The position numbers and the translations under genes are program-made. Below are positions 613 through 54,739 of a DNA stretch of 55,477 nucleotides, piece by piece. The notes under the pieces are model-generated. The model was not told the DNA's origin. It searched no databases and was given only the letters and a program-made list of their open reading frames with translations. How positions within the stretch are numbered: the first letter of the stretch is position 1; each line of letters opens with the position of its first letter. The stretch is from Octopus bimaculoides (taxonomy: Eukaryota), in assembly GCF_001194135.2 (NCBI RefSeq), contig NC_069000.1, positions 40,814,950 through 40,870,426 of the forward strand, given 5' to 3'.

Positions 613-2886
613 TTAGGACAAGTATCCTAATGGTTTCATCATGTCTCCGGTTTTAGACATTTTAGGACAGACTGAAGAATTTGATTTAACATTCATGTTC
701 AAAGTGGACATATTGTGTTCATGGTGATGGCGGTGGTGATGGTGGTGGTGATGGTGGTGGTGGTGGTGATGACCCATGGATGATGTCATGCCCATATGTA
801 TTGGCCTTGTGAAGGGAGGCACATCAGAATTAGGGAGGGCCAGATGTGTTAAACTGTTCTGCTTGGTTTGTGGTACTTCATATTCAGCATTGTATGCAGT
901 CTGTTGGATTTCGTTAGCTTTCTCACATTCCTTGGCATGTTTTGGCAAAGAAAGCTCAGAGAACATCAAAGAGCAGTATGCACAGTGAAAAGATCTTAGT
1001 TTCTGGAAGTTTTTAACATGAATATACAGGAATTTAGTTTTACTAAAGGCCATTCCGCAATGACTGCATTTATATAATTTGGGCACTGTTGAATCTTCAT
1101 TTTCCATTTCTGCTAGAGTTTGACAATCCTCTTCGTCTGAACATGAAACATTCCAAGAATGTTCCTCATTTGGGATTCTGTTTGAATTTTGATGGTTCAA
1201 CTTGGCATGAGTGGTGGAATTGTTTGTAAGTTTATTTGACTCCATTAACATCTCTATGTGTCTGTCTCCATCCATTAAAGAAGATCTTGATGTTTCTAGC
1301 CCTGCTATTTTATCATCTTTTCCAGAGTGCATCTGCTGCTTTTCATTGGAAGATGAAAGCTCTAAAAGACTCTGGGTTAAGCTGAATGAGCTTCCAAGAT
1401 TCAACTGGTGGTCATCTACATGTTTTTCCAGGGCAGCAATATCAGAGAATATTTGCTGACAATGAGAACATTCATAGGGCTTGTATCGGCTCACATCAAG
1501 CAAGTGGAGGAGATATTTAATTTTCGTGTACAACGTCTTATTACAGTGCTTACAGTGAAAGGGTTTCTCTCCAAGATGGGTCTTCCAATGACGTGTGCAT
1601 GTAGGTTTAGTAGCAAAGTCTTCATAACACAATTCACAACGGAATGGTTTTTTTGTATGCTTCCTTTCGTGGCTAACAAGAGCATCTGATGACAGAAACA
1701 CTTTACAACAAATATTGCAACTATATGACTTTCCTGGGTTACGCCAAGCAACTGGCGACGAAGCAGATATTGATAAGTTGTAATGTGCTTTGCGATGCAC
1801 AGCCAAACTGCTAGACGTTGAAAATAGTTTGAAGCAATGTTCACACTGGTGTCGCTTCTCCCCTGTATGGGATCGTGTGTGCACACCAAGACTACTGGAA
1901 GTGGTGAAGCATTTTTCACAATATACACATTTGTAGGGTCTTTCGCCAGTGTGAGATCGTAAATGCACAGTGAGACTGCCAGACGTGATAAACATCTTGT
2001 CGCAGAATTTGCACTGGAAACGCTTCTCTCCCGTGTGAGTCTTGATGTGCACAAGAAGACTTCCAGAGGTTGTGAAAAGTTTTTCACAAAACTTGCACTG
2101 GTAATTCTTCTCACCTGTATGGGAACGAAGATGCACTAGAAGACTGCCGGAAGTTGTGAAGAACTTCTCGCACAGATCACATCGATATCTTTTCTCCCCT
2201 GTATGCGTACGTTTGTGCACTAAAAGACTTCCCGATGTGGAGAACATCTTGTGACAGGTCTCACATTCATAGCTTTTTTCACCTGTGTGTGTACGAAGGT
2301 GTATGTTCAAACTACTAGCAGTTGACAAAAGCTTCTCGCAAACGTTACATTTAAATGTCATCCCATAATGGGTCTTGAGATGCCTTGTTAATTGAGCAGA
2401 TTTTGAAAATGTCTTCTGACAATAGTCACACTGAATAGATCCATAATGTATAGTGCCAAGCATAGAATGGCATTTCATATGACGCTGCAACAGGATTGGT
2501 TGTGAAAAGATTTTCTGGCAATATTTACATCTGATTGGATTCTCTTTCATATCATAATGTCTGCTGCCGTGTTGACTATTGGAAGTTGGGATGTTCTTGT
2601 ACATATGTTCATTAGCAATATTACTGCCAGAATCCATCATTCTTTTGTGAACAAACCCTTGCTCAGAGAGTGGCAGCAGCATATCACTGTTTACTTCTGA
2701 GTGGCTCACACCACCTTCAAGCCACTTCCTTCGTTGATTGTCCAACATTGGAGTTGTGGATCCAATATGTTCACGGAAATTTATTGAACTGTCATTGTAC
2801 ATACTGTGATCTGGGAAATTATGATCACTTGGCACAGAATTGCTTGTATCGTTTAGAGGAGGCACTGACACTTCACACTCAGCCAT
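613..2886 (-). CDS. C2H2 (Kruppel-type) zinc-finger protein, 757 aa, ~15 fingers (three degenerate), single coding exon, poly-His tail
   Basis: Uninterrupted ORF with repeated CxxC-x12-H-x3-H motifs and TGEK/TGERP linkers. ATG at 2886 lies in good context (AAGATGG). An upstream acceptor TTTTTCTAATTTCAG|G puts the exon start at 3003. Confidence 0.93.
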
Positions 2887-3003
2887 CTTGGTTAGAAAAA
2901 CGGAAATTGGATCAATATTTAAACAGAGTTCATTTCACAGATTTATTAAAGTTCTTTGAAGTTTCATAACAAATCATTGTTGATGTCAGCTGACTGCAAA
3001 ATC

Positions 3004-3025
3004 CTGAAATTAGAAAAAAAAATTA
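3004..3025 (-). other. 3' splice acceptor preceding the ZNF coding exon
   Basis: Minus strand reads TTTTTTTTCTAATTTCAG|GATTTTG (polypyrimidine tract, CTAAT, CAG). Confidence 0.75.
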
Positions 3026-3029
3026 AAAT

Positions 3030-3069
3030 ATAATAATAATAATAATAATAATAAATAATAATAATAATA

Positions 3070-3110
<41 letters not shown>

Positions 3111-3115
3111 TGATA
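3030..3115. repeat. (TAA)n/(ATT)n microsatellite next to the acceptor
   Basis: Direct reading of the sequence. Confidence 0.95.
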
Positions 3116-3394
3116 ATAAAACAAGAAGAAGAGCATGACTGTTATTGGTAATAAATAGAGATTGACTGTTTATTAAAATGAAAATGAAATGAATGAACAA
3201 TATTTCAACATCCTGTGAGTCTTTTACAAGTTCAAAATATAAAATGAAATTAAATTCAAAGATAGGAAACACTGAAACATTCAAAATTAAACCAGAATAA
3301 CTGTGTTTCTTTCCAAGTAAAACAACATCATCAGTCTTCGGTCTTTCACAAAAGGTAGCAGAGAGAAAGTAATAATAATAATAATAATAATAAT

Positions 3395-3845
3395 CCTTTC
3401 TACTATAACTACAAGGCCTGAAATTTGGGGTAGGTGGATAGTCGATTACATTGACCCCAGTACTCAACTGGTACTTAGTTTATCAACCTCGAAAGGATTC
3501 ATTGCAAAGTGTGGAGTTGGATAGGTAGGGGAGGTAATGAAGAGTAAGTGGAGACTACAGAGATTTGACAGGGTTGATGTAGTGAATTGTGGCTGGCTAA
3601 AAGGTGGAGCGGGTGAAGAGTAGTAGAATAGCAATGATGGTTTCACATTTTGGTGACAGGTCCAGCTTTTGAGGAGAGAGGGAAGTTGATTACACTGACC
3701 CCACCCTCCACCAGTACTTGACTGATTCTGATTTTATTGACACCAAAAGGATGGTGGACTCTGAATTTAGAATGTAAAGATGGATGAAATACAGCTGAGC
3801 ATTTTGTCTAGTGTGCTAATGGTTCTGCCAGCTTGACACCTTAGT
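3395..3845 (-). mobile_element. Two partial copies of tRNA-derived SINE family E ((ATT)n tail)
   Basis: Match the repeated unit ggcacaaggcctgaaatttt...cgaccccagtactcaactggtac...gaaaggatgaaaggcaaagtcgacc...gaactcaga seen many times in the window. Confidence 0.7.
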
Positions 3846-5114: not shown

Positions 5115-6640
5115 TTCTTTTCTACTCTAGGTACAAGGCCCGAAATTTTTGGGGTGGGGGCCCAGTTGATTAGATCGACCCCAGTACGCAACTGGTACTT
5201 AATTTATCACCTCCGAAAGGATGAAAGGCAAAGTCGACCTCGGTGGAATTTGAACTCAGAACATTAAAACAGACGAAATACTGCTAAGTATTTCGCCAGG
5301 CATGCTAACAGTTCTGCCAGCTCAAATAACAATAATGATAAGTTTCAGGTGGGTTGATATTAAAATGGTTAAAATATGACTGGTACTTAATTGTAAGTTT
5401 TGGTAGGATTTAGACTCACAATAAAGAGCACCAGAACTAAATATTGTAAACATAAATAGTCTGTTTGTTGTGTCACCTTTTCTATTAAACCACAGCCTCA
5501 AAAGTAATTGTTTTGAATTGGGATGCAAGGTTAATAATTGTGAAGGAGGCAAGGTTAGTCAAATACATCCACCCTTAGAACTTGACTGGTACTTTATTGA
5601 TGCCAAAAGGATGAAAACAAATATTTCCAACAGAAATAGTTAAAAGAAATACTACAAGGCATTTTAGTACACCTCAATAATAATAATAATGCTCCTTTCT
5701 TCTATAGGCACAAGGCCTGAAATTTTGTGGGAGAGGGGACTAGTTGATTACATAGACCCCAATTTTCCACTGGTACTTAATTTACTGACCCTGGAAGGAT
5801 GTAAGGCAAAGTCAACCTCAATGGAATTCGAACTCAGAGTGTGAAGATGGATGAAATGTCACTAAGTATTTTACCTTGTGTACTAACGATTCTGTAAGTT
5901 CACCATCTTAGTAATAATTATAATAATAATCTTTTCTACTATAGGCACAAGGCCTGAAACTTTGGGGATGGGGGACAGTCAATTACATCGACCCCAGTGC
6001 AAAACTGATACTTATTTAATTGACCCCGAAAGGATGATGAGCAAAGTCAACCCCAGCAGAATCTGAACTCAGAACACAGTGACTGGCGAAATACCGCAAA
6101 GCATTTCATCGAGCGTGCTAATGATTCTACCAGCTCACTACCTTAATAATAAAAATAAGAATGATGATTTCGAATTTTGGCACGAGGCCAGCAAGTTTGG
6201 GGGAGGGGTAAGTCAATTAGATCGCCCCCAATGCGTAAGTGGTACTTATTTTATCGACCCTGAAAGGATGAGAGGCAAAGCTGACCTCGGTCGAATTTGA
6301 ACTCAGAATGTAAAGAGACGAAATACTGCTAAGCATTTTGCCCAGTAACAATTAGAAAGACAACAATGGTGATGGTGGTGATGATGATGATAATCACTGC
6401 CTTCTTAATAATGATAATAATGATAATAATAATAATAATAATAATAATAATTCTTTCTACTATAAGCACAAGGCCTGAAATTTTGGGGACAGAGGGTTAG
6501 TCGATTACATCAACTCTAGAGCTCAACTGGTATTTATTTTATTGACCCTGAGAAGGTGAATGGACTCAATGTATAAAACAAAATAAATGCTGCTAAGCAT
6601 TTTGTCCAGAATGCTAATGATTCTGCTAACTCACAAACCT
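5115..6640 (-). mobile_element. Head-to-tail cluster of six SINE family E copies
   Basis: Copies at ~5115-5325, 5555-5672 (partial), 5693-5910, 5929-6145, 6165-6345 and 6452-6640. All have the same orientation and most are separated by (TAA)n. On minus, the head has an A-box-like TGGCAGAATCG and a B-box-like GAGTTCAAATTCC. Confidence 0.85.
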
Positions 6641-8030: not shown

Positions 8031-8194
8031 AGATTAAAAGTTAGTCTGTTTTCAAGTTTCATCAGTCTACTATGTAAGTTCAAACCCAGCTGGGGTTCTT
8101 AAAATATGTACCAGTCATAAACTGGTGTTGGGTTCAGCAGACCATCCTTCTCTCCAACAACTTGTGAATTTCTAACAATGGATCAAATTATTAA

Positions 8195-8314
8195 GTAGTG
8201 GTGATGGTGGTGGTGATGGTGGTGGTGATAGTGAAAGTAGTAACTACAATAAGCAACTGTAATTAGCAGCAGTAATAGTTATAGTACAAGTAGCAACCAT
8301 TAGCAGTGATGGTG

Positions 8315-8357
<43 letters not shown>

Positions 8358-8499
8358 CAGTAGTAATAGTAATGGCAGTGGTAGTGCTTAGTAGTAGTGG
8401 CAGTAGTAATAGTGATGGCAGTGGTAGTGCATAATAGTAGTAGTAGTAGGAGGAGGAGGAGTCATAGTAGCAGTGGTGGTGGTGGTGGTGAAGATAGTA

Positions 8500-8536
<37 letters not shown>

Positions 8537-24495: not shown

Positions 24496-24801
24496 NNNNN
24501 NNNNNNNNNNNNNNNNNNNNNNNNNNNNNNNNNNNNNNNNNNNNNNNNNNNNNNNNNNNNNNNNNNNNNNNNNNNNNNNNNNNNNNNNNNNNNNNNNNNN
24601 NNNNNNNNNNNNNNNNNNNNNNNNNNNNNNNNNNNNNNNNNNNNNNNNNNNNNNNNNNNNNNNNNNNNNNNNNNNNNNNNNNNNNNNNNNNNNNNNNNNN
24701 NNNNNNNNNNNNNNNNNNNNNNNNNNNNNNNNNNNNNNNNNNNNNNNNNNNNNNNNNNNNNNNNNNNNNNNNNNNNNNNNNNNNNNNNNNNNNNNNNNNN
24801 N

Positions 24802-27203: not shown

Positions 27204-27242
27204 ATTAATAATAGTAATAATAATAATAATATAATAATAATA

Positions 27243-27274
<32 letters not shown>

Positions 27275-27318
27275 GTAACATCGATAGGAATGAGAACCCA
27301 GGTTCGAAATTTCCCCAA

Positions 27319-37159: not shown

Positions 37160-37541
37160 TATTATATTTGACGGCTATTTATCCTCATCTTGTTTGTTGT
37201 TTACACAACATTTCAACTCATGTACTCTCCAGCCTTCATCAGGTGTCTTGGGGAAATTTCGAACCTGGGTTCTCGTTCCTAAGGTATTTTTTAATGTAAT
37301 TATTATTATTATTCAGGTCACTGCCTGGAATCGAACTCGGAATCTTGGGGTTAGTAACCCGCGCTCTAAACCACTACACTATATTCCAGGCAGTGGTTAA
37401 GAGTTCAATTCCCCAAGACACCTGATGAAGGCGGGAAAGTATATCAGCCAAAACATTGTGTTAACAACAAACAAGATGAGGACAAATATCCATCAAATGT
37501 AAATAAAGTACATAATTCCTCATCTCTCAAATATAGAACTG
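37160..37541. mobile_element. Second, older copy of the tRNA-head/hammerhead inverted element (opposite orientation)
   Basis: tRNA-like head on minus at 37314-37383. Decayed hammerheads at 37202-37247 (-) and 37417-37462 (+; GAAA>AAAA, CG>CA). The inverted arm ends aaatatagaactg as in copy 1. Confidence 0.75.
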
Positions 37542-44183: not shown

Positions 44184-47100
44184 TCACAACTCATTACTTT
44201 TAGCAGCTTTACTGCTTTCGGTTGCCGCTATAGTTTTAAGATGTGCAGGAGTGAAACTGCATGTTTTTCTGTGTCTGTAAAGGGCACTAGTTTGTGTGAA
44301 TGCTCGCTGGCAGTAACGGCATTGGTAAGGTCGTTCTCCAGTGTGCGTGCGTCTATGGGTAACCAAATGTCCAAACCGCGAGAAGGCTTTATCACAGTAT
44401 TCACAAAAGTAACGACGACTTTCAGCTGAATGTGAAGAGTCTGACTGAGGCGAGAAAGTGTCATCTTGAACAACTTTGTTGCCTCTTTTATTAACAACCT
44501 TAGACTTTTTAGGGACACAATGTGCAGCTGCTGATGGAATAGACTTAAGGCTCTTACTTTCTTCTTGTGCAACATTACTCCCTAGCTGATCATGTGTTCC
44601 CTCTGTACTCTCTAGGCAATTTGTGAGAGCCATTTCCTCTTGCAAGTATCCACCATCTTGAACAATTTCTCCTTTTAGAGAATTTTTCATGCTTTCATTT
44701 GTGTGGTCAACACTTTCATCATTGGCTGAAGCTTTTGATTGTGAAATAGTAAGACTAAGAGGATTTGTTTCTGAATCTAAAGGATTAGGTTTAGAAGAAG
44801 GAAGAGGTTCAGTTTTAATGTAACAATCATCAGTTTCAGAATCCACTTGGGAAAGAAATAGATTTTCTGACAAGTGTGAGCACAATTCTTTTGAATTGTT
44901 TTTACATTCTTCACAGCGAGGAAATCCTTCAGACAGCTCATTAGCATTAGACTGGTTCTCCTCTTTGACCCTCTTCGGAGGTGACATTTCTGTAACTTCC
45001 CTACTGCAAGCTCTATTGTTTTGTTCTGAATCCGTGCAAGGTTTTGCACTAGGAGTTTTGGTCAATTGCTTTCTCTTGTAACTCCTTTGAGGAAAGCTTG
45101 TTGGGTTGTTAACAGAAGGTGCCGTATCCATTAAAAAACTTTTGTTTCTTTCCTTTAAACTATGGTGATCATCTAACAAAGAATTAATTGCTTGTCTTCT
45201 TGAAAGGCAATTCAAGTCACTATTAAGATCATAACTCGAGTGAAGCTTTCCTCGTTTCGACAGCTTTAGTTTTTTCATCAGTCTACTTCCAATCCCTGTA
45301 TGTAACCTTTTGCGGTTGATCTTATTGCTGATTGTTGTTGAAGTGTTGAGCGATGATGTTTTCTTATGCCTGCCTTCTTTCTCCTTTGTGAAAGCAGACA
45401 CTGTTCTACTTGTTTCTTCATCAAGTAAGTTGACAGTTTTTTTAGAGACATTAGTAAGATATTCTGGTTCTAAATCGGGATTTTCAGCTCTGTGCAACTT
45501 CTGTTTAGACACATTAGGAAAGACTGTTTCTGCTTTCGATGGCTTCTTATGTGTTTCTGAAATGCGATTTCCAACACAATCTTGCTTGTTACTTGGCACA
45601 CACTGGAAAAGAGAAGTTGTTGCATTGGCCTTGAGACTGTTCTGGTTTTGAGGAGTTTTTTCTGGATCTTTCACTATCCTATCTTCAGGAAGTACACTTG
45701 TATTATGAATCACTAGAAAGCAAGTCTTGCGGTGCCTGTTAAGGGCGCTGACTTGTGTGAATTGCTTACCACAACCAGAACATTTGAATGGACGTTCTCC
45801 AGTGTGGATCCTGAGATGCATTTTTAGGTGACTAGAACGAGTGAAACCCTTTCTACAATGAGTGCAGACAAACCGAGATAAGTTTTGCTTTAATGAACTA
45901 TTTGTAGTGGGATTAACAACTGCAGGGTTAGAGGATTTATCCAACTGGGTAACTTTGTTTCTAGTTTTGCCAGTAGCACACTCACTGTTTCTAGGAGTGG
46001 TCGTACTGCCTTGCTTAGATTTTAAAGATGTCTGTAAAGAACTATACTTGGACTTAGCATTAAATTTTTCTCCTGGATTTTGTTTTGATATTGACTTTTT
46101 TAGCATTGTTTGTTTTTCGAATCTTTGTGCCTTACTTAGAACTGGAACCAGGTTATTATTTGGAATTGTGATTTTTGGAGGTTGTTCAACAACTAAATTA
46201 GAAAATTTGTGTTCTCTCCTTGAATTAACTCCTGAATCTGGATCATTAGTTGAATTTATCGTAATTTCATTTGAGAATTGTTTCAATTTATCAATTGAAT
46301 ACTGCTTAGAACATTGATCACTTTCTGATGGATTTTCAAAGTTCAAAATGGATATTTCTGGTTGACTAGAATGTTCTCTTAATGATGGATTTTCTATCAT
46401 GAAAGGCTGATTATGTTGGTCTTCTGGTAAGGTGATACCAGAGAAAGGAGATGTTGAAGCATGATGTCTACGACTTTCAGCTTGAGCATAGAATTTTCGC
46501 GTGAAAGGAGACAATATACGGTCAGTCGAAAACCTGTATTTGTTGATGTTATTCAAAGCTTTTTTAATTACTCTACGTACATTCTGGTTGAGAGAATTTT
46601 TCGTAACCAACCCTAATTGGGAAGTATCAGGGTTAGAAGTCTTTCCATCCAGATTAAAGTTGGAAAATTTTCTTCGCTGAAACTGTAACGAGCGACTGTG
46701 ATCCTGCTTATTCTGCCGAGATTTGCTGTAGGGATGCAACTTGTTTGGAAGAGTTCCTCTCTTCATTAAAGGAAATCTTTTGACATTACCAGTTTTACTG
46801 GTAGAACCTGAGTCTGACATCTTCAACTGTATTTCAGGAGCAGAATATACAGTTCGACTGGAGCTAAGTGGTATTTGGAATACTTTAGATTTTTTTGAAG
46901 TTATGGACCCATCATTGTAATTGGGTACAATGTCCTGATTAGATACTAAGCTTGTCTGAGATTTTGCTAAGGAAGTAGATTTATGATTAGAGTTTATATG
47001 TATTAGTAAAGAAATTAAATCAGCAAAGACAGTCTGACACTGGAGACACTGTCTGGGGGAAACAGCTGGAGTTATGGCAGAGGTTTCTAATTCACTCAGT

Positions 47101-50100
47101 TTGAATTTCAAATGAGAAAGAAGCTGTTCAAAATCACTAAATGTCATATCACAGCAGTCACATATGTAAATGCCATGACCAACATAATGCGAATAGAACT
47201 CATCTCTTTTATCAAAGACAAAACCACAACATATGAATTGGTCTGATGTTTTATCCAAGTCAAGTGCTGCTGTCGTTTCAGGCCATTTATTCCCTGACAC
47301 TGACAGAGCTACTCGAGCAAAACTGCATGTCTTTCTGTGCCTGTTGAGAGCACTTGACTGGGTAAAGGCCTTCTGACAATGACTACATCGAAATGGTCGT
47401 TCTCCTGTGTGAGTACGATGGTGCATAATCAGATGACCGCTACGGGTGAAAGTCTTTTCACAATACTTACAAGCAAATCTTTTGAATAAAGGTGTGGATG
47501 AAATATTTGTAGATGAGTCCATGTTCCATTGGTTCCAGTTGTTGCTGGAATCCTCCCAGACAACATAATCATTCATAGCAGACATTTGCTTTTCAATTTC
47601 AAGTTTTCTACTTTTGTCCATAGAAACCAGAGCTTGAGAAGCAACAGAAGAATTTTTTAGATTAAATAATAAATCTGGTGAATTGGATTCCATAGCTTGA
47701 AGATGGCAAATACCATCAGAATTTGTTTTATTCAGACCTTTAGACTTCTTATTATATAAACTAGATTCTAAGAGAGATTCTTTGTTAGAGACTGGATCTT
47801 TAGATGAGACTTCAATGATAAAATTTTCCTCTTCATCATCTTTATCTTCTCTCTTGATTGTGGAAGAATTATCCAGAAATGTTGACTGATGTCTAATTTC
47901 AGAATTGTTCTCATCAAAACTGATCTGTTCAGAAACATTCCAATCTTTAAAAGATCGGTGGCTAGCTAGATGTAAGTTAAAACTATCATTGCCTACAAAC
48001 ATTTGACCACAACATGTAAATGTACAAGTATTTTCCTTTTTCACTAATGTAGGTGAGGTGATATCAGAGGAGTCAGTGTGGTTACTCTCTTTCATCAATG
48101 TAGCAGACATATCTTCACCAGGATTGACTAGATTCTCTTGATCATCAGAAAATATTTGTTGGTTGGCAATATTTTGCTGATTAATGTCTAATGAATGAGT
48201 CATTAAATGAGAAATTACATCACCCTTATCAGAAAATATCTCATCACAAAAGTGACAATTGTATGTAGCATCAACAATTTCTGTTTTAATTTGAATGTCT
48301 GGGCGGTATACTGTGCTTGAAGCACAACTTTCAAGGTTTCTATTGTTCTGACTGGTATTATTCCTAGAAGACAAATTAATCTCTTGTGTATAATTTTTGC
48401 TTCCAGAGTCCACTTGAGAGCAATTTATCTTAAAAGAACATACCTTCTGGTGTTTGATAAAGTCATCAAGTTTCAGGTACTCACAGCTACAGTATTCACA
48501 TTTTATGATACCTTCATTGCCTTCTTCACAAGGGATTTTATCAATGCTATTAAATCTCACCTCAGACATCTGGGTATAATCTCTATTTAATTGATAATCC
48601 TCTCCAGCTACATTTTGCTCAGACAATAAAGAACTTTTATTTTTATCCAAGTCTGAATCTATTTGGATTAGGTCTCCTTCGTCTTCTTTTGCTCGAGTCT
48701 GTATATTGTGAAGCATTAGTAACTTAATTCGGCAACATGTTTTCAGGTGCCTGTTGAGAGCGGAAGTCTGGGTAAATGCTTTCATACAGTACTGACATGA
48801 GTATGGCCTCTCTCCTGTATGGGTGCGAAGATGTTGCATTAAATGACCAGACCGTGAAAATCCACGATTACAATATTGACAGACATAGCGCCGAGTTTCA
48901 GACAGGTTCTCTTCATTTGAAGAGGCCTGATTAGGTTTGGAGATGATGTTATCTGAATTATGAAGCAGTGTTTTTCTGTCATTTTTACTTGATGTTCTTT
49001 GATAGTCTGATAATACAACATTTGAGATCGTTTGCATATTTTCGGAGTGTTGTACCTCTGAATGTATTACAGAACTGTCAATATCAGTAGAGTGATTGTC
49101 TTTTATATGGAAACTCTTCATATGCTCATTAAAATCATCTCCCATGAATGTTTGGTTGCAACAAACAAACATCTTACAACTGTTTGTAAGATTCATACCA
49201 TCTTTATTGAAACTAACTGTGCCCTCTTTATTAGTCTTTTTATCAGATGTAGATAGATCACCATTAACTTCTTTCAAATCAATCACTATTTGGTCTAAGT
49301 GCTGAGAGCTACCATCATTGCTGTTATCCTTACTATCACTGTTTGTTTCAGTCCCTGATTTCAATTTGATATTTTCCTGAGAAACTGACTGGTTAAGAAT
49401 TTTCTCTCCTGTTTTCTCATCAAGTAACGGTTTATTAGTAGTTATATTATTCAAAACTAAATGCTCATCCAGATTTACTTTGTTGTGGTACAGAGCAAAA
49501 GTGCTACTATTGTTGCTAGATTTGCCTACAGTCCTTGCTTTTGACAGCGACTCTTCTTTCAAAGGTTGAACATTAGAAGTATTTTGTGTCCTTTCTAAAC
49601 TATCACAAACTACTGATTGTTCAGGCACTTTATCCTGGCAACCATTTTCATTAATACCTTCACAGTCAGACCGGTTGTTTGCAACAGTCAGTGGAGTACA
49701 CAAAACGATGTCAGCAAAATGAGAGCTTTTACCTTTAGTACTGTCGTTGGAAATATTTTCAGCTGACAAATTCGCAAAGGTGGTAGAAGAACCACATAGT
49801 TTCAGATGTTGTTCAAACTTAGACGATGAATAATAGTTTTCCTTACAAAACCAACAAACATAATGCTTTTTACTTGTGTGGAGAAGGACATGCTCTTCTA
49901 GTAGCATCAATGAAGTAAATGATGCAGTACAATAAGAACAAGACAATTTCCTAGCTGAATCTTTATTGTTGGTTGTAATTTCCTGTTTAGATAAGTTATT
50001 TGACAGAGTGCTACACTGCCCATCAGTTTGATCAGAAATGTCAATATTTTCTGCTTTGGAAGAGTAAGAAAGCATATCACATGCAGAAGTGTTGCCTAAA

Positions 50101-53100
50101 CTGTCCATAGAGTTAAGATTATCAGAACATTTACTTTTATCATCATGTTGGTCAGATAAACTAGATAAAAGTTGCCAATTCTCAAACAGTTTGGTATTAT
50201 CTGACTTATTCTGTAGAGGACTAGTTGCTTCTCCAGTTGTTTTACTCCCAGTAGAGTTTGAATCCAACTGACCGGTAATTACTAAATCATTATTCACTTG
50301 CTTGTCTACAATGTCAGCAATACAGGATTCTGACAATATCATTGCACAGTTCTTTGAGTGTTCATAAAAAGTACCAGAATTTTCAAATGTTTTGGAGCAT
50401 TTTGAACAAGTCAGTGATTTCTCGGCAACAGATAATGTTACATTGACATTGCACTGTTCTTGAGGACTTGAAACTTTTTCAAAATCAATTGAACAATTAC
50501 TTATAGTATTATCATCCATATGGTATTGATCTTTTAACTGGCTTGCATTAGAGCTATTGCTGTAAATTGCTGGTGCATCACTGATTGTCATGTCAGTGCA
50601 ACCTTTACTGTCTGGCTTGGATTTTGCAGTTGTGGAATAAAAGCTGGAAGAAAATGGTGGGGTTTCTGGTGAATAAGTATGGAAATGGCTATCTTCGAAA
50701 TTTGGAGGTTCATCTGTATTGCTGTTTACAGAAGAGTCAGCAATCTGAGAAATATCAGTTGTAATCATGTCTCTAAAGTCACTTCCTAAGGTCAAAGTGA
50801 CATTAGGTTCAGGAATTTCAGGTGACATACTAGAATCATTGGATTGCAAACTTTGGAAATGATTTGCATCTCTTAGTTGGTTAGTCAGTTCAACAACAGC
50901 TGTTGGTTTTGTTACATTAGAATTAGATGCAATCATGGAATTTTCTTGACAGCTGATACCTTCTTCAATCTGATCAATTTTTAGCTCACCAGAACATTCT
51001 TGGAGATTATTGTGCACAACTTGCAGAGCACTCCCAAGTATCATATTTTCCTGTTCTTCAGAGTATGAACTGTTCAAAGTACCATCAAATTTTGCCTGGT
51101 CAAGATTATTTAAGGTATGAGTCCCATGGAGAAGCTTGTAAGCATTTAAAACTGCTTCATTTTCTGCTGAATTTGATTGTGTAGAACAACTAAGTCTGGC
51201 TGAGTTGACTGACAGACTGGAACTGGAAGAACAATTAGAGGTATTGTGATTAGCAACTAAAACATTGCTAAAATATTCCAAGCTATTTTTTTCTTGCTTG
51301 ATATCATTACCACTCAACTGCTTGGTACTTTTATATTTCCTGATATAATTCTTTCTCATGTGTCTTGAGAGCAACTGAGAATCAGGAAAGTTTTCCAGCA
51401 TCAATGGAGAATTGTACAGGATGTCATCATTTAGTTCACTATCTTGCAAGGAGATTGTATCTTTGCCTTTTCTGTGGCACTCAACATGATTCCGCAGCTC
51501 TTTGCTACTACTGAAGACTTGGCCACAGCAGGTAAAAGTGAAGTTGTCAGGATCAATACTGTCCTCTCTGATTTTACTGTCCAAGTTAATTACTTCAGAG
51601 CGCTCCATTGCACTAACAGCATTCCCAGTAGTTTTAATGGAGGCATTTAACTCCGGGTATCTGACTCGTAGGCAAGTTTTGGTGTGTCTGTTTCGAGCAC
51701 TAGATTGTGAAAAGGCACGACCACAACTCTCACACTGGAATGGCTTCTCTCCTGTGTGTATTCGGATGTGTGTTTCCAGATGAGATTGTTTGAAGAATTC
51801 CTTTGGGCAATAACTGCAAGGGAAACTTTTGCGCTGAATGTCAAATTCATTTACAGTCTCCACAGCAACACGAGAATTAGAACTAACAAGATCTCTTTGC
51901 TCTAAAACGTTGACGTCTTCATTATGAATGGATTTGTTGGTGTTGGAGTCTATTTGAGAATGGGAGTTTTTTTTAGACTCACTGGAATGTGAAGCTTTGT
52001 GAATCTGATACACAATGGAGGAATGGAAAGGCTTGGAACAAATATCACAAACTAAATTAGTTGACGAATTGGATTTGGTTTCAACACTACTGCGTGTGTT
52101 AAAAACATTTCCTTTGTTTACCATTGCAACAGTAGGTTTTCCTTTGGTGTCAAGAGATTCTGATATCTTGCTAGTTTTATCAGGTAACAGAGAAATATTT
52201 GATCTGCAGGTGTTAGAGTTGGTCAATGGATGCTCAGTTTGAAACTGAGAGTTATTGGTTGAATGTGAAGAGTTCTTTTTCATTATCAGCGAATTAACTT
52301 TGTTTAAGAACTCTCTATGATTTGAAGACTTACTAGGGGATTTTTTAGTTGAAGTTTTAGATCTTGTAATGTGTTTGTTTCTTGCTGAAAAAGATCGCAT
52401 TAAATTAGTGGTTGATGAATTTCGACTCTGCAACTGAGAAATCTTTGATAAATTATTAACCCGATGGTGTTTCTTTATATGGACTTTAAGATGAGGATAT
52501 GATACAAACTCAACTAAACAAATGCTACACTGATAGGTTCTATCATTTTTTGTATTAAAACTTTTTTCCCTATGTTTTACTTGTCTAGACTCAGGCATGG
52601 GAGCTTTGAAACTTTGCGTCTTACTTTTAATCATGGAAGTTGAAGCACTTTTTAGTTTGGTGGATGGCGTTTTTACAAAGCTGTTCTTGGCTGAATCAGT
52701 GTGATCATTAACTATATCAAAGTCATCATTCACAACATCTTCATTAGGCTTTAATTGACTTTTATGTGCTGCTGGACACACTTTTAAGTGGCTGTCATAT
52801 TTAGACACTTGTTGAAAATTATCACCACAGAATTGACATGTGAAAGAAATGTCACTGCCAAGGGTTAAGTCAGAGGTAAGGTGATATTGTGCAGTAGTGT
52901 CCCATTGAATATTCGAATTAATGCTTTGAGCAACACTGCATGTCTTTAGATGGCGATTAAGTGCACTTGATTGTGTAAATGCATTACCACAAAAATCACA
53001 TTTAAATGGTCTTTCTCCTGTATGTGTACGTAAATGCTGGGTCAAACGGCTAGTACGTGTAAATTGGCGTGAGCAGAACTGGCAAGTTAAGTGTTGGTGA

Positions 53101-54473
53101 ATTTTGGTTTTCACAGAGTCTTTTAATTCAGAAGATTTTAACTTGGAATTTATATTTTTTTGAACTTTGTTAGCATTTTCTGCAATTTTTTCATTGTCAC
53201 TTTGATGAGATAACTGGTTGAAATGTTTACTACTTGTCAAATCATTATTTGGCAGAATTTGAGTTGAGAAAGAATTAGATGAGTCCTTCCAAGATTTGTC
53301 CCCATTACAAGCAAGCAACTGATCTGAAGACAGAGAATCTTGTGAAGTAAAAATAGCAATGGATGTATCGTTAGAGCAGTCTTTTGGTAATGTTTTTTTG
53401 CTAATTGCATCGGTTTTCTCCCGCAACAGTCTGAGATTTTCAGCCAAACTATCAATGTCTGATAACTGAGATTGGTCAATTTTTAACTGCTTATTAGAAC
53501 TGTTACCAGGTGACATATTATTTTTATCCCAGACATACGTGCTATCTTGAGATTGGTCAGTTAGTTCAATTGTTATTGGATCAAATATGGGATCATGTTG
53601 GTTATTTGCTTGAGAAAAGCATAAGTTGTTCTTTGGAGATTCCATATGATTATCAGTTAGATTGATGGTGATCTTGTTTTGGTCAAGACTATCTTTTGTC
53701 ACCTCTGGCTGATTATCATGAACAATTATTTGATACTGTGACTCAGAACTTGACAAGATATTCAAATTTTCTTTGGTTGACGACTGCTTTTTACCATTTA
53801 TAGACGTGTTTGTCTTATTGTGGAACTGGCTTTGTTTCTTTCCTATTTTATCTATAGTAGTAACGTCTTTCATCATATCATTGACATGGCTGTTGTTGTT
53901 TGGTAACAGGCTCAATAATTCAGAGTGAGACGGGTCACTGTGACCAGCTATGTGCTTGTTGTAATCAGAAGAATCTTTAAATGTTTTATTACAACAAACA
54001 AACATTATGTCATCATGTGTTTCAATATTATCATTTGAAAGTGTTCCAAGTGATGTAAACGCACTTTCTGAAGCAGATAGCATTGCATAGTGTTTTTCTG
54101 CTGCTGCAATAGAAGTTTCTAGCATTTTCACGTTAGCTGATAACTCCAGGCTGTCTTTGTTTGGCACTTTAGTACAGATTTTCATATGGCGATAGAGAGC
54201 ACTGGATTGAGTGAAGGCTTTGTGACACTGTTGGCAAACATAAGGGCGTTCACCTGTGTGAATACGACGGTGCATCACCAAGTGGCCATTGCGAGAGAAT
54301 GACTTTGAACAATAGTTACAGGTATATTTTTTTGAAGCTGTAATGTCTGTAATTGCAGACATGCTTGGGTTTCCATTTGCAAGAAAAGGGAGTTCCTTTG
54401 TACCTGCAGTATTGTTTACAAAGTTCAATATAGGTGGCCATTCGACCGATGCATTCTGGTCTGTACTATCCAT
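44184..54473 (-). CDS. Giant multi-zinc-finger protein (~3429 aa): seven dispersed C2H2+C2HC pairs plus scattered single/atypical fingers in S/N/K-rich, likely disordered linkers; single coding exon
   Basis: 10.3-kb uninterrupted ORF. The first in-frame ATG (CACATCATGG, 54473) follows an in-frame TAA at 54627-54629, and the track's start at 54593 is TTG. Seven HTGE(R/K)P-linked finger pairs. Confidence 0.92.
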
Positions 54474-54739
54474 GATGTGATCTAGTAAACCTAGTTCGAA
54501 ATCACAACAAAGCTTCTCTTTCTTGAGAAGTAATAGAGTAGCTGATGAAAAATATGAACCACTTACAAATCCCTGTATTAGGTACCATGGCAACAGTTGA
54601 AGAGAAATGATATAAGTGTATATCAGTTACCATGGAGATAACTCATGTACAAGGTACCAAATGTTAACAGGGTCTTCAATATATATGTCACAGAAACTTG
54701 TTTCTGTCATGAATTGGTGTGAGTTGATCTACGGAGATC

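What the first reader, a model, noticed from the sequence alone, without database searches (positions are those of the whole stretch)
1783..2355. Seven consecutive fingers with one recognition helix (T-S-G/S-S-L-x-V): a predicted trinucleotide-microsatellite reader
Seen: fingers 3-9 have helices TASSLNI, TSGSLLV (x3), TSGSLTV, TSSSLGV and TSSSLAV joined by TGE(K/R)-type linkers. Established: engineered modules TSGSLVR and TTGNLTV recognise GTT and AAT, so T(-1)/S(+3)/V(+6) predicts about (A/N)TT per finger. Inference: a ~21-bp (ATT)7 or (GTT)7 target. The locus is full of such tracts: (TAA)n beside this gene's own acceptor (3030-3115), (ATT)n tails of SINE family E, the (AAT)n of the ribozyme element, and (TTG)n blocks. 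This suggests an SSR/SINE-tail-binding factor, possibly for repeat surveillance or autoregulation.
Basis: partly seen in the sequence, partly recalled or inferred. Interest (0 to 1): 0.72.

Follow-up and report, generated by a model that had tools for sequence, protein, structure and literature searches.

The report
Octopus zinc fingers sharing one helix
A conserved octopus gene encodes a zinc-finger protein in which seven neighbouring fingers carry almost the same DNA-contacting residues, which predicts binding to long A/T-rich three-base repeats such as (ATT)n, but that target is inferred from sequence and has not been tested.

Summary
A single-exon ORF (window 613-2886, minus strand, 757 aa, Octopus bimaculoides chromosome) has fingers 3-9 at 1783-2355. 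Their helices are TASSLNI, TSGSLLV x3, TSGSLTV, TSSSLGV and TSSSLAV, joined by TGEK-type linkers. This is not chance and not recent duplication. Fingers are saturated at synonymous sites relative to each other. Contact positions are 79% identical between fingers, other variable positions only 31%, the reverse of 35 control poly-zinc-finger proteins. The one orthologue found (Argonauta hians) keeps all 49 helix residues although synonymous sites are saturated (4 nonsynonymous against 76 synonymous differences in 192 codons). However, Thr(-1)/Gly(+2)/Ser(+3)/Val(+6) are small or hydrophobic residues. In SALL4 structures such residues read thymine methyl groups and generally give loose specificity. 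The supported prediction is therefore a 3-bp-periodic, T-rich A:T tract of about 21 bp: (ATT)n is the leading candidate and (GTT)n is unlikely. Abundant AAT repeats in the locus are not evidence. An (ATT)n tract just upstream of the gene's splice acceptor in both species is suggestive only. Conservation outside octopods could not be tested. Verdict: real, conserved, unusual array; interpretation partly supported; new variant of a known kind.

The parts
613..2886 (-). Complete coding sequence (757 aa plus stop) of a C2H2 zinc-finger protein, on one exon. It is the orthologue of Argonauta hians 'zinc finger protein 846'.
   Evidence: ORF list and translation. Pfam finds only C2H2 families. A gene call with this exact product lies on GCA_001194135.2 CM046620.1. 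It is 78-82% identical end to end to P0001.
1783..2355 (-). Fingers 3-9, the seven-finger block with one recognition-helix type, joined by six TGEK/TGER linkers.
   Evidence: Against Argonauta there are 4 nonsynonymous and 76 synonymous differences in 192 codons.
2302..2322 (-). Finger 3 helix TASSLNI
2218..2238 (-). Finger 4 helix TSGSLLV
2134..2154 (-). Finger 5 helix TSGSLLV
2050..2070 (-). Finger 6 helix TSGSLLV
1966..1986 (-). Finger 7 helix TSGSLTV
1882..1902 (-). Finger 8 helix TSSSLGV
1798..1818 (-). Finger 9 helix TSSSLAV
   Evidence: checked by eye
2368..2529 (-). Fingers 1-2 (helices QPILLQR, KSAQLTR) with non-canonical linkers. These are candidate flank-specific or non-DNA fingers.
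   Evidence: nearly invariant in Argonauta
1408..1719 (-). Fingers 10-13 (SSDALVS, TKPTCTR, a degenerate finger lacking the last His, DIAALEK).
925..1068 (-). Two atypical C-terminal fingers ([21 protein letters not shown]; [20 protein letters not shown]).
   Evidence: Read from the translation; conserved in Argonauta.
722..768 (-). His-run coding repeat (His13-Arg-His3) near the C-terminus.
   Evidence: In Argonauta it is expanded to a His/Gln/Cys/Asn-rich block of about 85 aa.
2887..3005 (-). Inferred splice acceptor (AG at 3005-3004, preceded by T9CTAATTTC) and the 5'UTR part of the coding exon, conserved with Argonauta.
   Evidence: Alignment A2. The splice site is inferred from consensus and conservation; there is no transcript evidence.
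3026..3119 (-). (ATT)~28 tract on the sense strand, about 25 nt upstream of the acceptor. Argonauta has (ATT)6 in the same place. It is a candidate self-target or part of the U-rich acceptor region.

Best explanation
This is a conserved octopod nuclear C2H2 zinc-finger protein. Its central block of seven canonically linked fingers most likely lies in the major groove over about 21 bp. Every finger presents the same small or hydrophobic contact set: Thr(-1), Gly/Ser(+2), Ser(+3), Val/Ile(+6). These side chains cannot make the Arg-G or Asn-A hydrogen bonds that give sharp specificity. As in SALL4 ZF6-7, they can pack against thymine C5-methyl groups. The array should therefore select long A:T-rich tracts that are T-rich on the contacted strand with a 3-bp period, (W-T-T)n. 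(ATT)n/(AAT)n microsatellites are the best-fitting abundant genomic target, and poly(dA:dT)-like tracts are also plausible. Because the target is itself a repeat, any register fits and several molecules could tile a long tract. The polar fingers 1-2 and 10-13 may add flank specificity or partner binding. Shown: the anatomy, the inverted conservation pattern, and extreme purifying selection. Inferred: DNA binding, the A:T/thymine-methyl mode, and (ATT)n as the target. Unknown: what the protein does once bound.
For: (1) DNA-binding hallmarks are read directly. The spacing is C-x2-C-x12-H-x3-H. There are six TGEK/TGER linkers. Lys is invariant at C-x-K-x-F, and a basic residue sits between the two His in all seven fingers. 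Pfam zf-C2H2 and zf-H2C2_2 match at 1e-39 and 1e-47. (2) The contact set is uniform and selected. Contact identity is 0.79 against 0.31 at other variable positions, while controls average 0.20 and 0.38. Run lengths are far beyond controls. (3) Fingers are old duplicates (pS about 0.88), so the sameness has been maintained rather than inherited recently. (4) Against Argonauta there are 0 nonsynonymous changes in 49 helix codons and 4 in 192 finger codons, against 76 synonymous. This is the most constrained part of the protein. (5) Structural precedent: in SALL4 ZF7 (helix TKGNLKV), Thr(-1), Gly(+2) and Val(+6) contact thymine methyls, as does Ile(+6) of ZF6 (PMC9672407; PMC12264921). Fingers 3-4 are 53% identical to SALL4 ZFC4, with helices TASSLNI/SASALQI and TSGSLLV/TKGNLKV. 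The typed SALL4 sequence matched chains 8cuc, 8a4i and 7y3i at 108 bits over 49 aa. (6) Engineered modules agree: TSGSLVR=GTT, and Val(+6) goes with a 5'-A in TTGNLTV=AAT, DSGNLRV=AAC and RRDELNV=ATG. (7) Suitable tracts of at least 21 bp exist about once per 7 kb in this window.
Against: There are no binding data of any kind. Ser at +3 removes the adenine hydrogen bond that dominates SALL4 affinity (N912A costs more than 55-fold), so affinity and specificity per finger may be low. The review states that small residues usually give degenerate, 'versatile' recognition. Val(+6) is read as 5'-A in the engineered sets but contacts a thymine methyl in SALL4, so ATT and TTT cannot be told apart. Long arrays often use only a subset of fingers. 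Conservation is shown for a single orthologue within Octopoda. Purifying selection covers whole fingers, not only the helices.
Confidence: 0.5

Rival explanations
1. One reading: the array is a sharply specific (ATT)7 or (GTT)7 microsatellite reader. It marks SINE tails and other simple repeats for surveillance and regulates its own gene through the (ATT)n tract at its acceptor.
For: The modular code gives A-T-T per finger. AAT is the commonest trinucleotide repeat in the window, and three tracts abut copies of one interspersed repeat. An (ATT)n tract sits just 5' of the conserved acceptor in both O. bimaculoides ((ATT)~28) and Argonauta ((ATT)6). That tract is the only (ATT)>=5 tract in 14.6 kb of the Argonauta locus, while the rest of the intron is unalignable.
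Against: (GTT)n needs Arg at +6, which is absent. Small contact residues argue against sharp specificity. Repeat abundance is genome background: ACT, AAC and ATC repeats are also common. A T-rich microsatellite next to a polypyrimidine tract can persist or re-arise without any link to this protein. No effector domain such as KRAB was found. The gene evolves very slowly, unlike transposon-tracking zinc-finger genes.
Confidence: 0.2
2. The seven fingers are a low-specificity DNA clamp or spacer. They add non-specific affinity or span DNA, while the polar fingers 1-2 and 10-13 choose the real, non-repetitive target.
For: Contact residues are all small or aliphatic. The review describes such fingers as versatile contacts, spanners or spacers. 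The flanking fingers have polar helices ([28 protein letters not shown]) and are also highly conserved.
Against: A mere spacer would not need the same four contact residues in every finger while the rest of each finger diverges (0.79 against 0.31). Nor would it need zero change in 49 helix codons over saturated synonymous divergence.
Confidence: 0.15
3. The block binds something other than double-stranded DNA, such as RNA (for example AUU-rich RNA), a protein partner, or itself (multimerisation).
For: C2H2 fingers can mediate protein contacts (abstracts of PMC12774644 and PMC6643046). The block scores on Pfam zf-C2H2_jaz and zf-met. It lacks strongly base-specifying residues.
Against: The jaz and zf-met hits are generic overlap with C2H2 models. 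Canonical TGEKP-type linkers and conserved phosphate-contact positions are typical of DNA-wrapping arrays. The close match of fingers 3-4 to a DNA-bound SALL4 pair also points to DNA.
Confidence: 0.1
4. The sameness is only by descent, from recent tandem duplication or gene conversion of one finger, and has no functional meaning.
For: Finger arrays do grow by unit duplication. In O. bimaculoides the +3 Ser is AGT in all seven fingers and the +6 Val is GTG in all six.
Against: Between fingers pS is about 0.88 and third-position identity is near random. Non-contact positions are only 31% identical. The same seven helices are already present in Argonauta, where the Val codons differ (GTC, GTA, GTG).
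Confidence: 0.03

Closest known systems
SALL4 zinc-finger cluster 4 (ZF6-ZF7; PDB 7Y3I, 8A4I, 8CUC), the A:T-rich 'base-composition' reader
   Same: The helix pair SASALQI/TKGNLKV compares with TASSLNI/TSGSLLV, and fingers 3-4 are 53% identical to it over 49 aa. Thr(-1), Gly(+2) and Val/Ile(+6) are the thymine-methyl contacts in the SALL4-DNA structures.
   Different: SALL4 uses one isolated pair with Asn(+3) hydrogen-bonding adenine and reads 4-6 bp (AATA). Here +3 is Ser and the second-finger type is iterated six times in one continuous array (about 21 bp). The protein lacks SALL architecture: there are no separated finger pairs, and the N-terminus reads MAECEV..., with no SALL-type N-terminal motif (the motif itself is from my own knowledge).
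Zfp568 ZF5-ZF6 reading a run of A:T pairs through thymine methyl groups
   Same: Small residues in consecutive fingers contact thymine methyls over a stretch of five A:T pairs (review PMC12264921).
   Different: That is two fingers within a heterogeneous 11-finger KRAB protein that targets a unique site. Here there are seven uniform fingers and no KRAB domain.
ZSCAN4, a natural zinc-finger protein that binds (CA)n/TG microsatellites
   Same: It is a natural C2H2 protein whose genomic targets are a class of microsatellites (abstracts of PMC7083622 and PMC10785592).
   Different: It has four dissimilar fingers plus a SCAN domain and reads a dinucleotide repeat or the TGCACAC motif. It does not have an iterated single helix.
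Engineered modular zinc-finger arrays, including GGAA-repeat-targeted arrays
   Same: They establish the principle that repeating a module gives an array that reads a tandem repeat (abstract of PMC9374162). The modules TSGSLVR=GTT and TTGNLTV=AAT resemble the natural helices.
   Different: Those are designed proteins with strongly base-specifying residues. This is a natural, conserved gene with weakly specifying residues.
Lineage-specific C2H2 expansions of coleoid cephalopods and KRAB zinc-finger genes of tetrapods
   Same: It is a polydactyl C2H2 gene with the coding sequence on one exon in an octopus genome. A link between expanded zinc-finger genes and repeats is an open question there (PMC12513265).
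   Different: It is not fast-evolving (gene-wide dN/dS about 0.06, finger block about 0.007). It has a 1:1 orthologue in Argonauta, no KRAB domain, and no similar paralogue in the window.

Membership tests
Classical C2H2 (Krueppel-type) polydactyl DNA-binding zinc-finger proteins | C-x2-4-C-x12-H-x3-5-H units with the conserved Phe and Leu core | tested here: met
   There are 12 regex fingers. All seven in the block are C-x2-C-x12-H-x3-H with F/L at the core positions. Pfam PF00096 matches at 1.6e-39 and PF13465 at 1.1e-47.
Classical C2H2 (Krueppel-type) polydactyl DNA-binding zinc-finger proteins | TGEKP-type inter-finger linkers (7 residues, His to aromatic) | tested here: met
   TGEKSY, TGEKRY, TGEKNY, TGEKRF, TGERPY and TGEKRH lie between fingers 3-9. 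Pro is replaced in five of the six.
Classical C2H2 (Krueppel-type) polydactyl DNA-binding zinc-finger proteins | Sequence-specific binding to double-stranded DNA | not testable with these tools
   This needs SELEX, PBM, EMSA or DAP-seq.
SALL (Spalt-like) family | Finger pairs with a SAL-box-like second helix (FTTKGNLKVH), arranged in separate clusters along a long protein | tested here: not met
   The helices resemble the SAL-box ([10 protein letters not shown]; 53% identity of fingers 3-4 to ZFC4). But the fingers form one continuous 9-finger array plus a 4-finger array, not separated pairs.
SALL (Spalt-like) family | Asn at +3 of the second finger that hydrogen-bonds adenine | tested here: not met
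   +3 is Ser in all seven fingers. Asn912 is essential in SALL4.
SALL (Spalt-like) family | Conserved N-terminal repression motif and N-terminal C2HC finger (feature list from my own knowledge) | tested here: not met
   The N-terminus reads [16 protein letters not shown]..., and there is no finger before residue 120.
KRAB or SCAN zinc-finger proteins (transposon- or repeat-targeting, ZSCAN4-like) | N-terminal KRAB (PF01352) or SCAN (PF02023) domain | tested here: not met
   The Pfam scan at E<=0.01 returns only C2H2 families.
KRAB or SCAN zinc-finger proteins (transposon- or repeat-targeting, ZSCAN4-like) | Rapid, lineage-specific evolution of contact residues | tested here: not met
   0 of 49 helix codons changed between Octopus and Argonauta, with synonymous sites saturated.
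Microsatellite-binding proteins (functional class) | Demonstrated preferential binding to a tandem short repeat | not testable with these tools
   Only a prediction is available, from contact residues and the presence of candidate tracts.

The most novel reading that the evidence does not exclude
Octopods keep a dedicated, slowly evolving seven-module 'thymine-methyl ruler'. It binds (ATT)n microsatellites genome-wide, including the (ATT)n ends of an abundant interspersed repeat. It also binds a conserved (ATT)n tract beside the acceptor of its own coding exon. This would make it the first natural zinc-finger protein built by iterating one recognition module to read a trinucleotide repeat, with autoregulation through its own intron.
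Probability: 0.15. Interest if true: 0.8.

Novelty: new variant of a known kind. Interest (0 to 1): 0.55.

Why it matters
Natural poly-zinc-finger proteins almost always vary their contact residues from finger to finger. An array that has held one contact set in seven consecutive fingers, while the rest of each finger drifted, implies a tandemly periodic ligand. If that ligand is (ATT)n or related A:T tracts, it would extend the SALL4-type 'base-composition reading' mode from a two-finger, 4-6 bp reader to a 21-bp periodic reader. It would also give octopus genomes, which are rich in SINEs and simple repeats, a candidate factor that recognises repeat tracts. And it would offer a natural template for A:T-repeat-targeting zinc-finger tools. 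The question is directly testable with a small recombinant fragment (193 aa) and synthetic oligonucleotides or DAP-seq on octopus DNA.

Tried and rejected
(1) The full-length homologue search returned one true orthologue (Argonauta) and was otherwise swamped by generic poly-zinc-finger proteins, whose many fingers add up in the score. (2) A search with the N-terminal 183 aa returned nothing, not even the Argonauta protein that shares long identical stretches. This behaviour is unexplained, and the search was wasted. (3) The exhaustive HMMER search with aa 370-660 was again swamped by giant zinc-finger proteins; only P0001 covers the query end to end. (4) A masked query, with all finger frameworks and linkers set to X and only helices and non-finger parts kept, gave 5767 candidates, of which only P0001 passed E<=0.001. 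So no other protein in that collection has several in-register TSGSLxV helices. However, the collection lacks this protein itself and returned no other Octopus species, so absence from squids and cuttlefish is not shown. (5) PDB sequence searches rank by summed finger scores and are uninformative for specificity. The SALL4 link came from comparing helices and was then checked. (6) An alignment of 119 control proteins was too large to export, so 35 were used instead. (7) An Rfam gathering scan of the whole window gave 0 hits. (8) Recent duplication or gene conversion was considered and rejected. SALL membership and KRAB/SCAN membership were also rejected. (9) Structure prediction was not run, because it would not inform DNA specificity.
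Full report
WHAT IS THERE. The finding lies inside one long open reading frame on the minus strand, window 613-2886, encoding 757 aa. A gene with exactly this product is called on assembly GCA_001194135.2, chromosome record CM046620.1, near 40.81 Mb. From my own knowledge that accession is Octopus bimaculoides; the tool does not name the organism. Pfam finds only C2H2 zinc-finger families: zf-H2C2_2 at 1.1e-47 and zf-C2H2 at 1.6e-39. There is no KRAB, SCAN, BTB or other effector domain.

A regular-expression parse gives 12 canonical fingers. Fingers 1-2 have helices QPILLQR and KSAQLTR and unusual linkers. Fingers 3-9 are the block in question. Fingers 10, 11 and 13 have helices SSDALVS, TKPTCTR and DIAALEK, and a degenerate finger sits between 11 and 13. 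There are also two atypical C-terminal fingers, a His13 run and a conserved tail.

CHECK OF THE OBSERVATION. Their helices, positions -1 to +6, are TASSLNI, TSGSLLV, TSGSLLV, TSGSLLV, TSGSLTV, TSSSLGV and TSSSLAV. They are joined by TGEKSY, TGEKRY, TGEKNY, TGEKRF, TGERPY and TGEKRH.

IS IT MORE THAN CHANCE OR RECENT DUPLICATION? I used 35 unrelated polydactyl zinc-finger proteins from the homologue search as controls (688 fingers, 544 adjacent pairs).
- Adjacent fingers share the (-1,+3,+6) triple in 13 of 544 pairs, and the longest run is 3.
- The T/S/V triple never occurs.
- Fingers with only small or aliphatic contact residues are 30 of 688, with a longest run of 2.
- The octopus block has a run of 6 identical triples (7 if Ile is counted as Val) and 7 small-only fingers in a row.

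The sameness is not inherited from a recent duplication. Between the seven 84-nt units, third-codon-position identity is 0.21-0.61 and the proportion of synonymous differences is about 0.88, which is saturated.

More tellingly, the usual variability pattern is inverted. Among fingers 3-9 the four contact positions (-1,+2,+3,+6) are 79% identical, while the other non-framework positions are only 31% identical. In the controls the means are 20% and 38%. The best of 146 control seven-finger windows reaches 55% at contacts, but with 60% elsewhere, the signature of young duplicates. So the contact set has been held constant while the finger scaffolds drifted.

CONSERVATION. The only orthologue I could retrieve is Argonauta hians 'zinc finger protein 846' (P0001; 78-82% identity over the full length). 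Its locus L001 carries an 864-aa single ORF. Both species are incirrate octopods of different families.

Synonymous sites between the two genes are saturated (pS 0.56-0.80; Jukes-Cantor dS above 1 or undefined). dN/dS values are therefore rough, and the counts are the safer numbers. In fingers 3-9 there are 76 synonymous and 4 nonsynonymous differences in 192 codons (dN/dS about 0.007). In the 49 helix codons there are 15 synonymous and 0 nonsynonymous differences. The block is the most constrained part of the protein. By comparison, dN/dS is about 0.04 in the N-terminus and 0.16 in the inter-finger linker region and the tail.

Attempts to go beyond octopods failed for technical reasons. Searches containing fingers are swamped by long generic arrays, and an N-terminal query inexplicably returned nothing. 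A masked query that kept only helices and non-finger sequence found 5767 word-sharing candidates, of which only P0001 passed E<=0.001. That shows no other protein in that 5.8-billion-sequence collection has several in-register TSGSLxV helices. However, the collection lacks this protein itself and returned no other Octopus species. Its cephalopod coverage is thin, and absence from squids and cuttlefish is not established.

WHAT THE HELICES PREDICT. Published module tables give GTT=TSGSLVR and ATG=RRDELNV (PMC3607563), and AAT=TTGNLTV and AAC=DSGNLRV (PMC9705829). By that logic Thr(-1) specifies a 3'-T, Ser(+3) a middle T, and Val(+6) a 5'-A, which gives ATT per finger. (GTT)n, however, depends on Arg(+6), which is absent here.

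Structural work adds a closer natural precedent and a caution. In SALL4 ZFC4 bound to AATATT-type DNA, ZF7 has helix TKGNLKV (PMC9672407; review PMC12264921). [quoted passage not shown] Asn(+3) makes the only base-specific hydrogen bonds, to adenine, and N912A weakens binding more than 55-fold.

Octopus fingers 3-4 (TASSLNI / TSGSLLV) are 53% identical to that SALL4 pair. The octopus fingers thus share the three methyl-contacting residues but replace the hydrogen-bonding Asn by Ser.

The same review states that small or non-aromatic hydrophobic residues at contact positions generally give 'versatile' contacts and degenerate sequence, and in some cases read thymine methyls in A:T-rich DNA. Note also that Val(+6) goes with a 5'-A in the engineered sets but touches a thymine methyl in SALL4. 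The sound prediction is therefore (W-T-T)n: a T-rich, A:T-only tract of about 21 bp with 3-bp periodicity. (ATT)n is the leading candidate and poly(dA:dT)-like tracts are also possible. A sharp (ATT)7 specificity is not warranted.

Features typical of DNA-wrapping arrays are present in all seven fingers: canonical linker length, Lys at C-x-K-x-F, and a basic residue between the two His. DNA binding itself is nevertheless inferred.

THE GENOMIC-CONTEXT ARGUMENT. The window (36.9% G+C) holds 13 perfect AAT-class tracts of at least 15 bp, 7 of them at least 21 bp. This is the commonest trinucleotide repeat class here, but ACT (8 tracts), AAC (10) and ATC (7) repeats are also frequent. A (WTT)7 pattern with up to one mismatch matches 47 times at 8 loci, against 0.01 expected from shuffles. 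That only restates that microsatellites exist.

Three AAT tracts (at 3370, 5676 and 6423) directly abut copies of one interspersed repeat (...CTACTATAGGCACAAGGCCTGAAA...). None of this is evidence that the protein binds them. It shows only that a (WTT)n reader would have roughly one potential site per 7 kb. No Rfam family reaches its gathering score in the window, so the 'ribozyme element' is unconfirmed.

ONE NEW HINT. The coding exon is preceded by a consensus acceptor, T9-CTAATTTCAG|G, with the AG at 3005-3004 on the minus strand. This acceptor and the roughly 115-nt 5'UTR segment down to the ATG align well with Argonauta, whereas the intron further upstream does not.

Immediately 5' of the acceptor's T-run, O. 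bimaculoides has (ATT)~28 on the sense strand (3026-3119). Argonauta has (ATT)6 at the equivalent place (L001 5804-5821). That is the only (ATT)>=5 tract in the 14.6-kb Argonauta locus. With background densities of about 0.23 and 0.07 tracts per kb, a chance co-occurrence within about 120 bp in both species is unlikely (roughly 3% times 1%). The tract is therefore probably orthologous and long-lived.

It fits equally well a role of the U-rich tract in splicing, or simple persistence of a microsatellite next to a polypyrimidine tract. I treat it as a lead, not as support.

MECHANISM I COMMIT TO (confidence about 0.5). The protein is nuclear and binds DNA. Its seven uniform fingers read thymine methyl groups along a 3-bp-periodic, A:T-only tract; (ATT)n is the best candidate. 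Because the target is repetitive, binding is register-independent and molecules can tile. Fingers 1-2 and 10-13 and the conserved termini provide additional specificity or effector contacts.

Rivals are:
- A low-specificity clamp whose flanking fingers choose the target (0.15).
- A non-dsDNA ligand such as RNA or protein (0.1).
- Sameness by descent only (0.03, contradicted).

COMPARISON WITH WHAT IS KNOWN. The block works most like SALL4 ZFC4, and like Zfp568 ZF5-6 as described in the review, but it is not a SALL protein. The fingers are not in separated pairs, Asn(+3) is missing, and the N-terminus is unrelated.

It is not a KRAB or SCAN protein, and it does not evolve like transposon-tracking zinc-finger genes. 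Natural microsatellite-binding zinc-finger proteins exist: ZSCAN4 binds (CA)n (PMC7083622). Engineered arrays of repeated modules bind GGAA repeats (PMC9374162). I found no described natural array that iterates one weakly specifying helix seven times. The recent survey of cephalopod C2H2 genes leaves their binding sites as an open question (PMC12513265).

VERDICT. Novelty: a new variant of a known kind, namely A:T-rich or thymine-methyl reading by C2H2 fingers, iterated here into a long periodic reader. Interest 0.55: unusual and cleanly testable, but resting wholly on inference for function and on one orthologue for conservation.

Noticed in passing
window 44184-54593 (minus strand): A single 3469-aa ORF encodes a giant zinc-finger protein with at least seven widely spaced finger pairs of one type (C-x2-C...F[ST]R.GHL..H.R[IT]HTGERP[YF].C..C.KAFTQ[ST]SAL.RH.K[IT]C, a C2H2 finger followed by a C2HC-like finger). 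Pfam shows only C2H2 families plus a weak BIRD-IDD C2HC hit.
   Followed up: partly
window 3026-3119 and L001 5804-5821: An (ATT)n tract lies on the sense strand just 5' of the conserved splice acceptor of the coding exon in both O. bimaculoides ((ATT)~28) and Argonauta hians ((ATT)6), although the rest of the intron is unalignable. It is the only (ATT)>=5 tract in the 14.6-kb Argonauta locus.
   Followed up: partly
whole window (tracts listed): There is a strong strand bias in AAT-class microsatellites. 12 of 13 perfect tracts have AAT on the plus strand (ATT on the minus strand, the sense strand of both zinc-finger genes), and all 47 (WTT)7 matches are on the minus strand.
   Followed up: no
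window 722-768; L001 about 8140-8500: The C-terminal His13 run of the octopus protein corresponds in Argonauta to a His/Gln/Cys/Asn-rich repeat block of about 85 aa (HDHCQQ-type units). The NCBI gene model removes it as an 'intron', although the genomic ORF reads straight through (864 aa against the annotated 779 aa).
   Followed up: partly
window 1798-2322 (helix codons): In O. bimaculoides the +3 Ser is AGT in all seven fingers and the +6 Val is GTG in all six, although other codons of the helices vary. In Argonauta the Val codons are GTC, GTA and GTG x4, so this is probably not an RNA-level constraint.
   Followed up: partly
window 3394-3480, 5690-5780, 6449-6540 (also 5134, 5948): Several copies of one interspersed repeat (core ...CTACTATAGGCACAAGGCCTGAAATTTTGGGG...GTCGATTACATCGACCCCAGT...) are present. 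Three of them are bordered by an (AAT)n tract on the plus strand. TRF also reports a 235-bp-period array of them at 5676-6338.
   Followed up: partly
window about 24500-24800: A run of N (an assembly gap) shows up as X in ORF translations, flanked by (TA)n and (TAG)n repeats.
   Followed up: no
The tracts at 27207-27276 and 37299-37313 adjoin sequences that look tRNA- or SINE-like by eye.
   Followed up: partly
tool behaviour: A homologue search with the N-terminal 183 aa returned 8 candidates and no hit, although the Argonauta orthologue shares long identical stretches with that query and was found by the two other searches. Negative results from that tool should be read with care.
   Followed up: no
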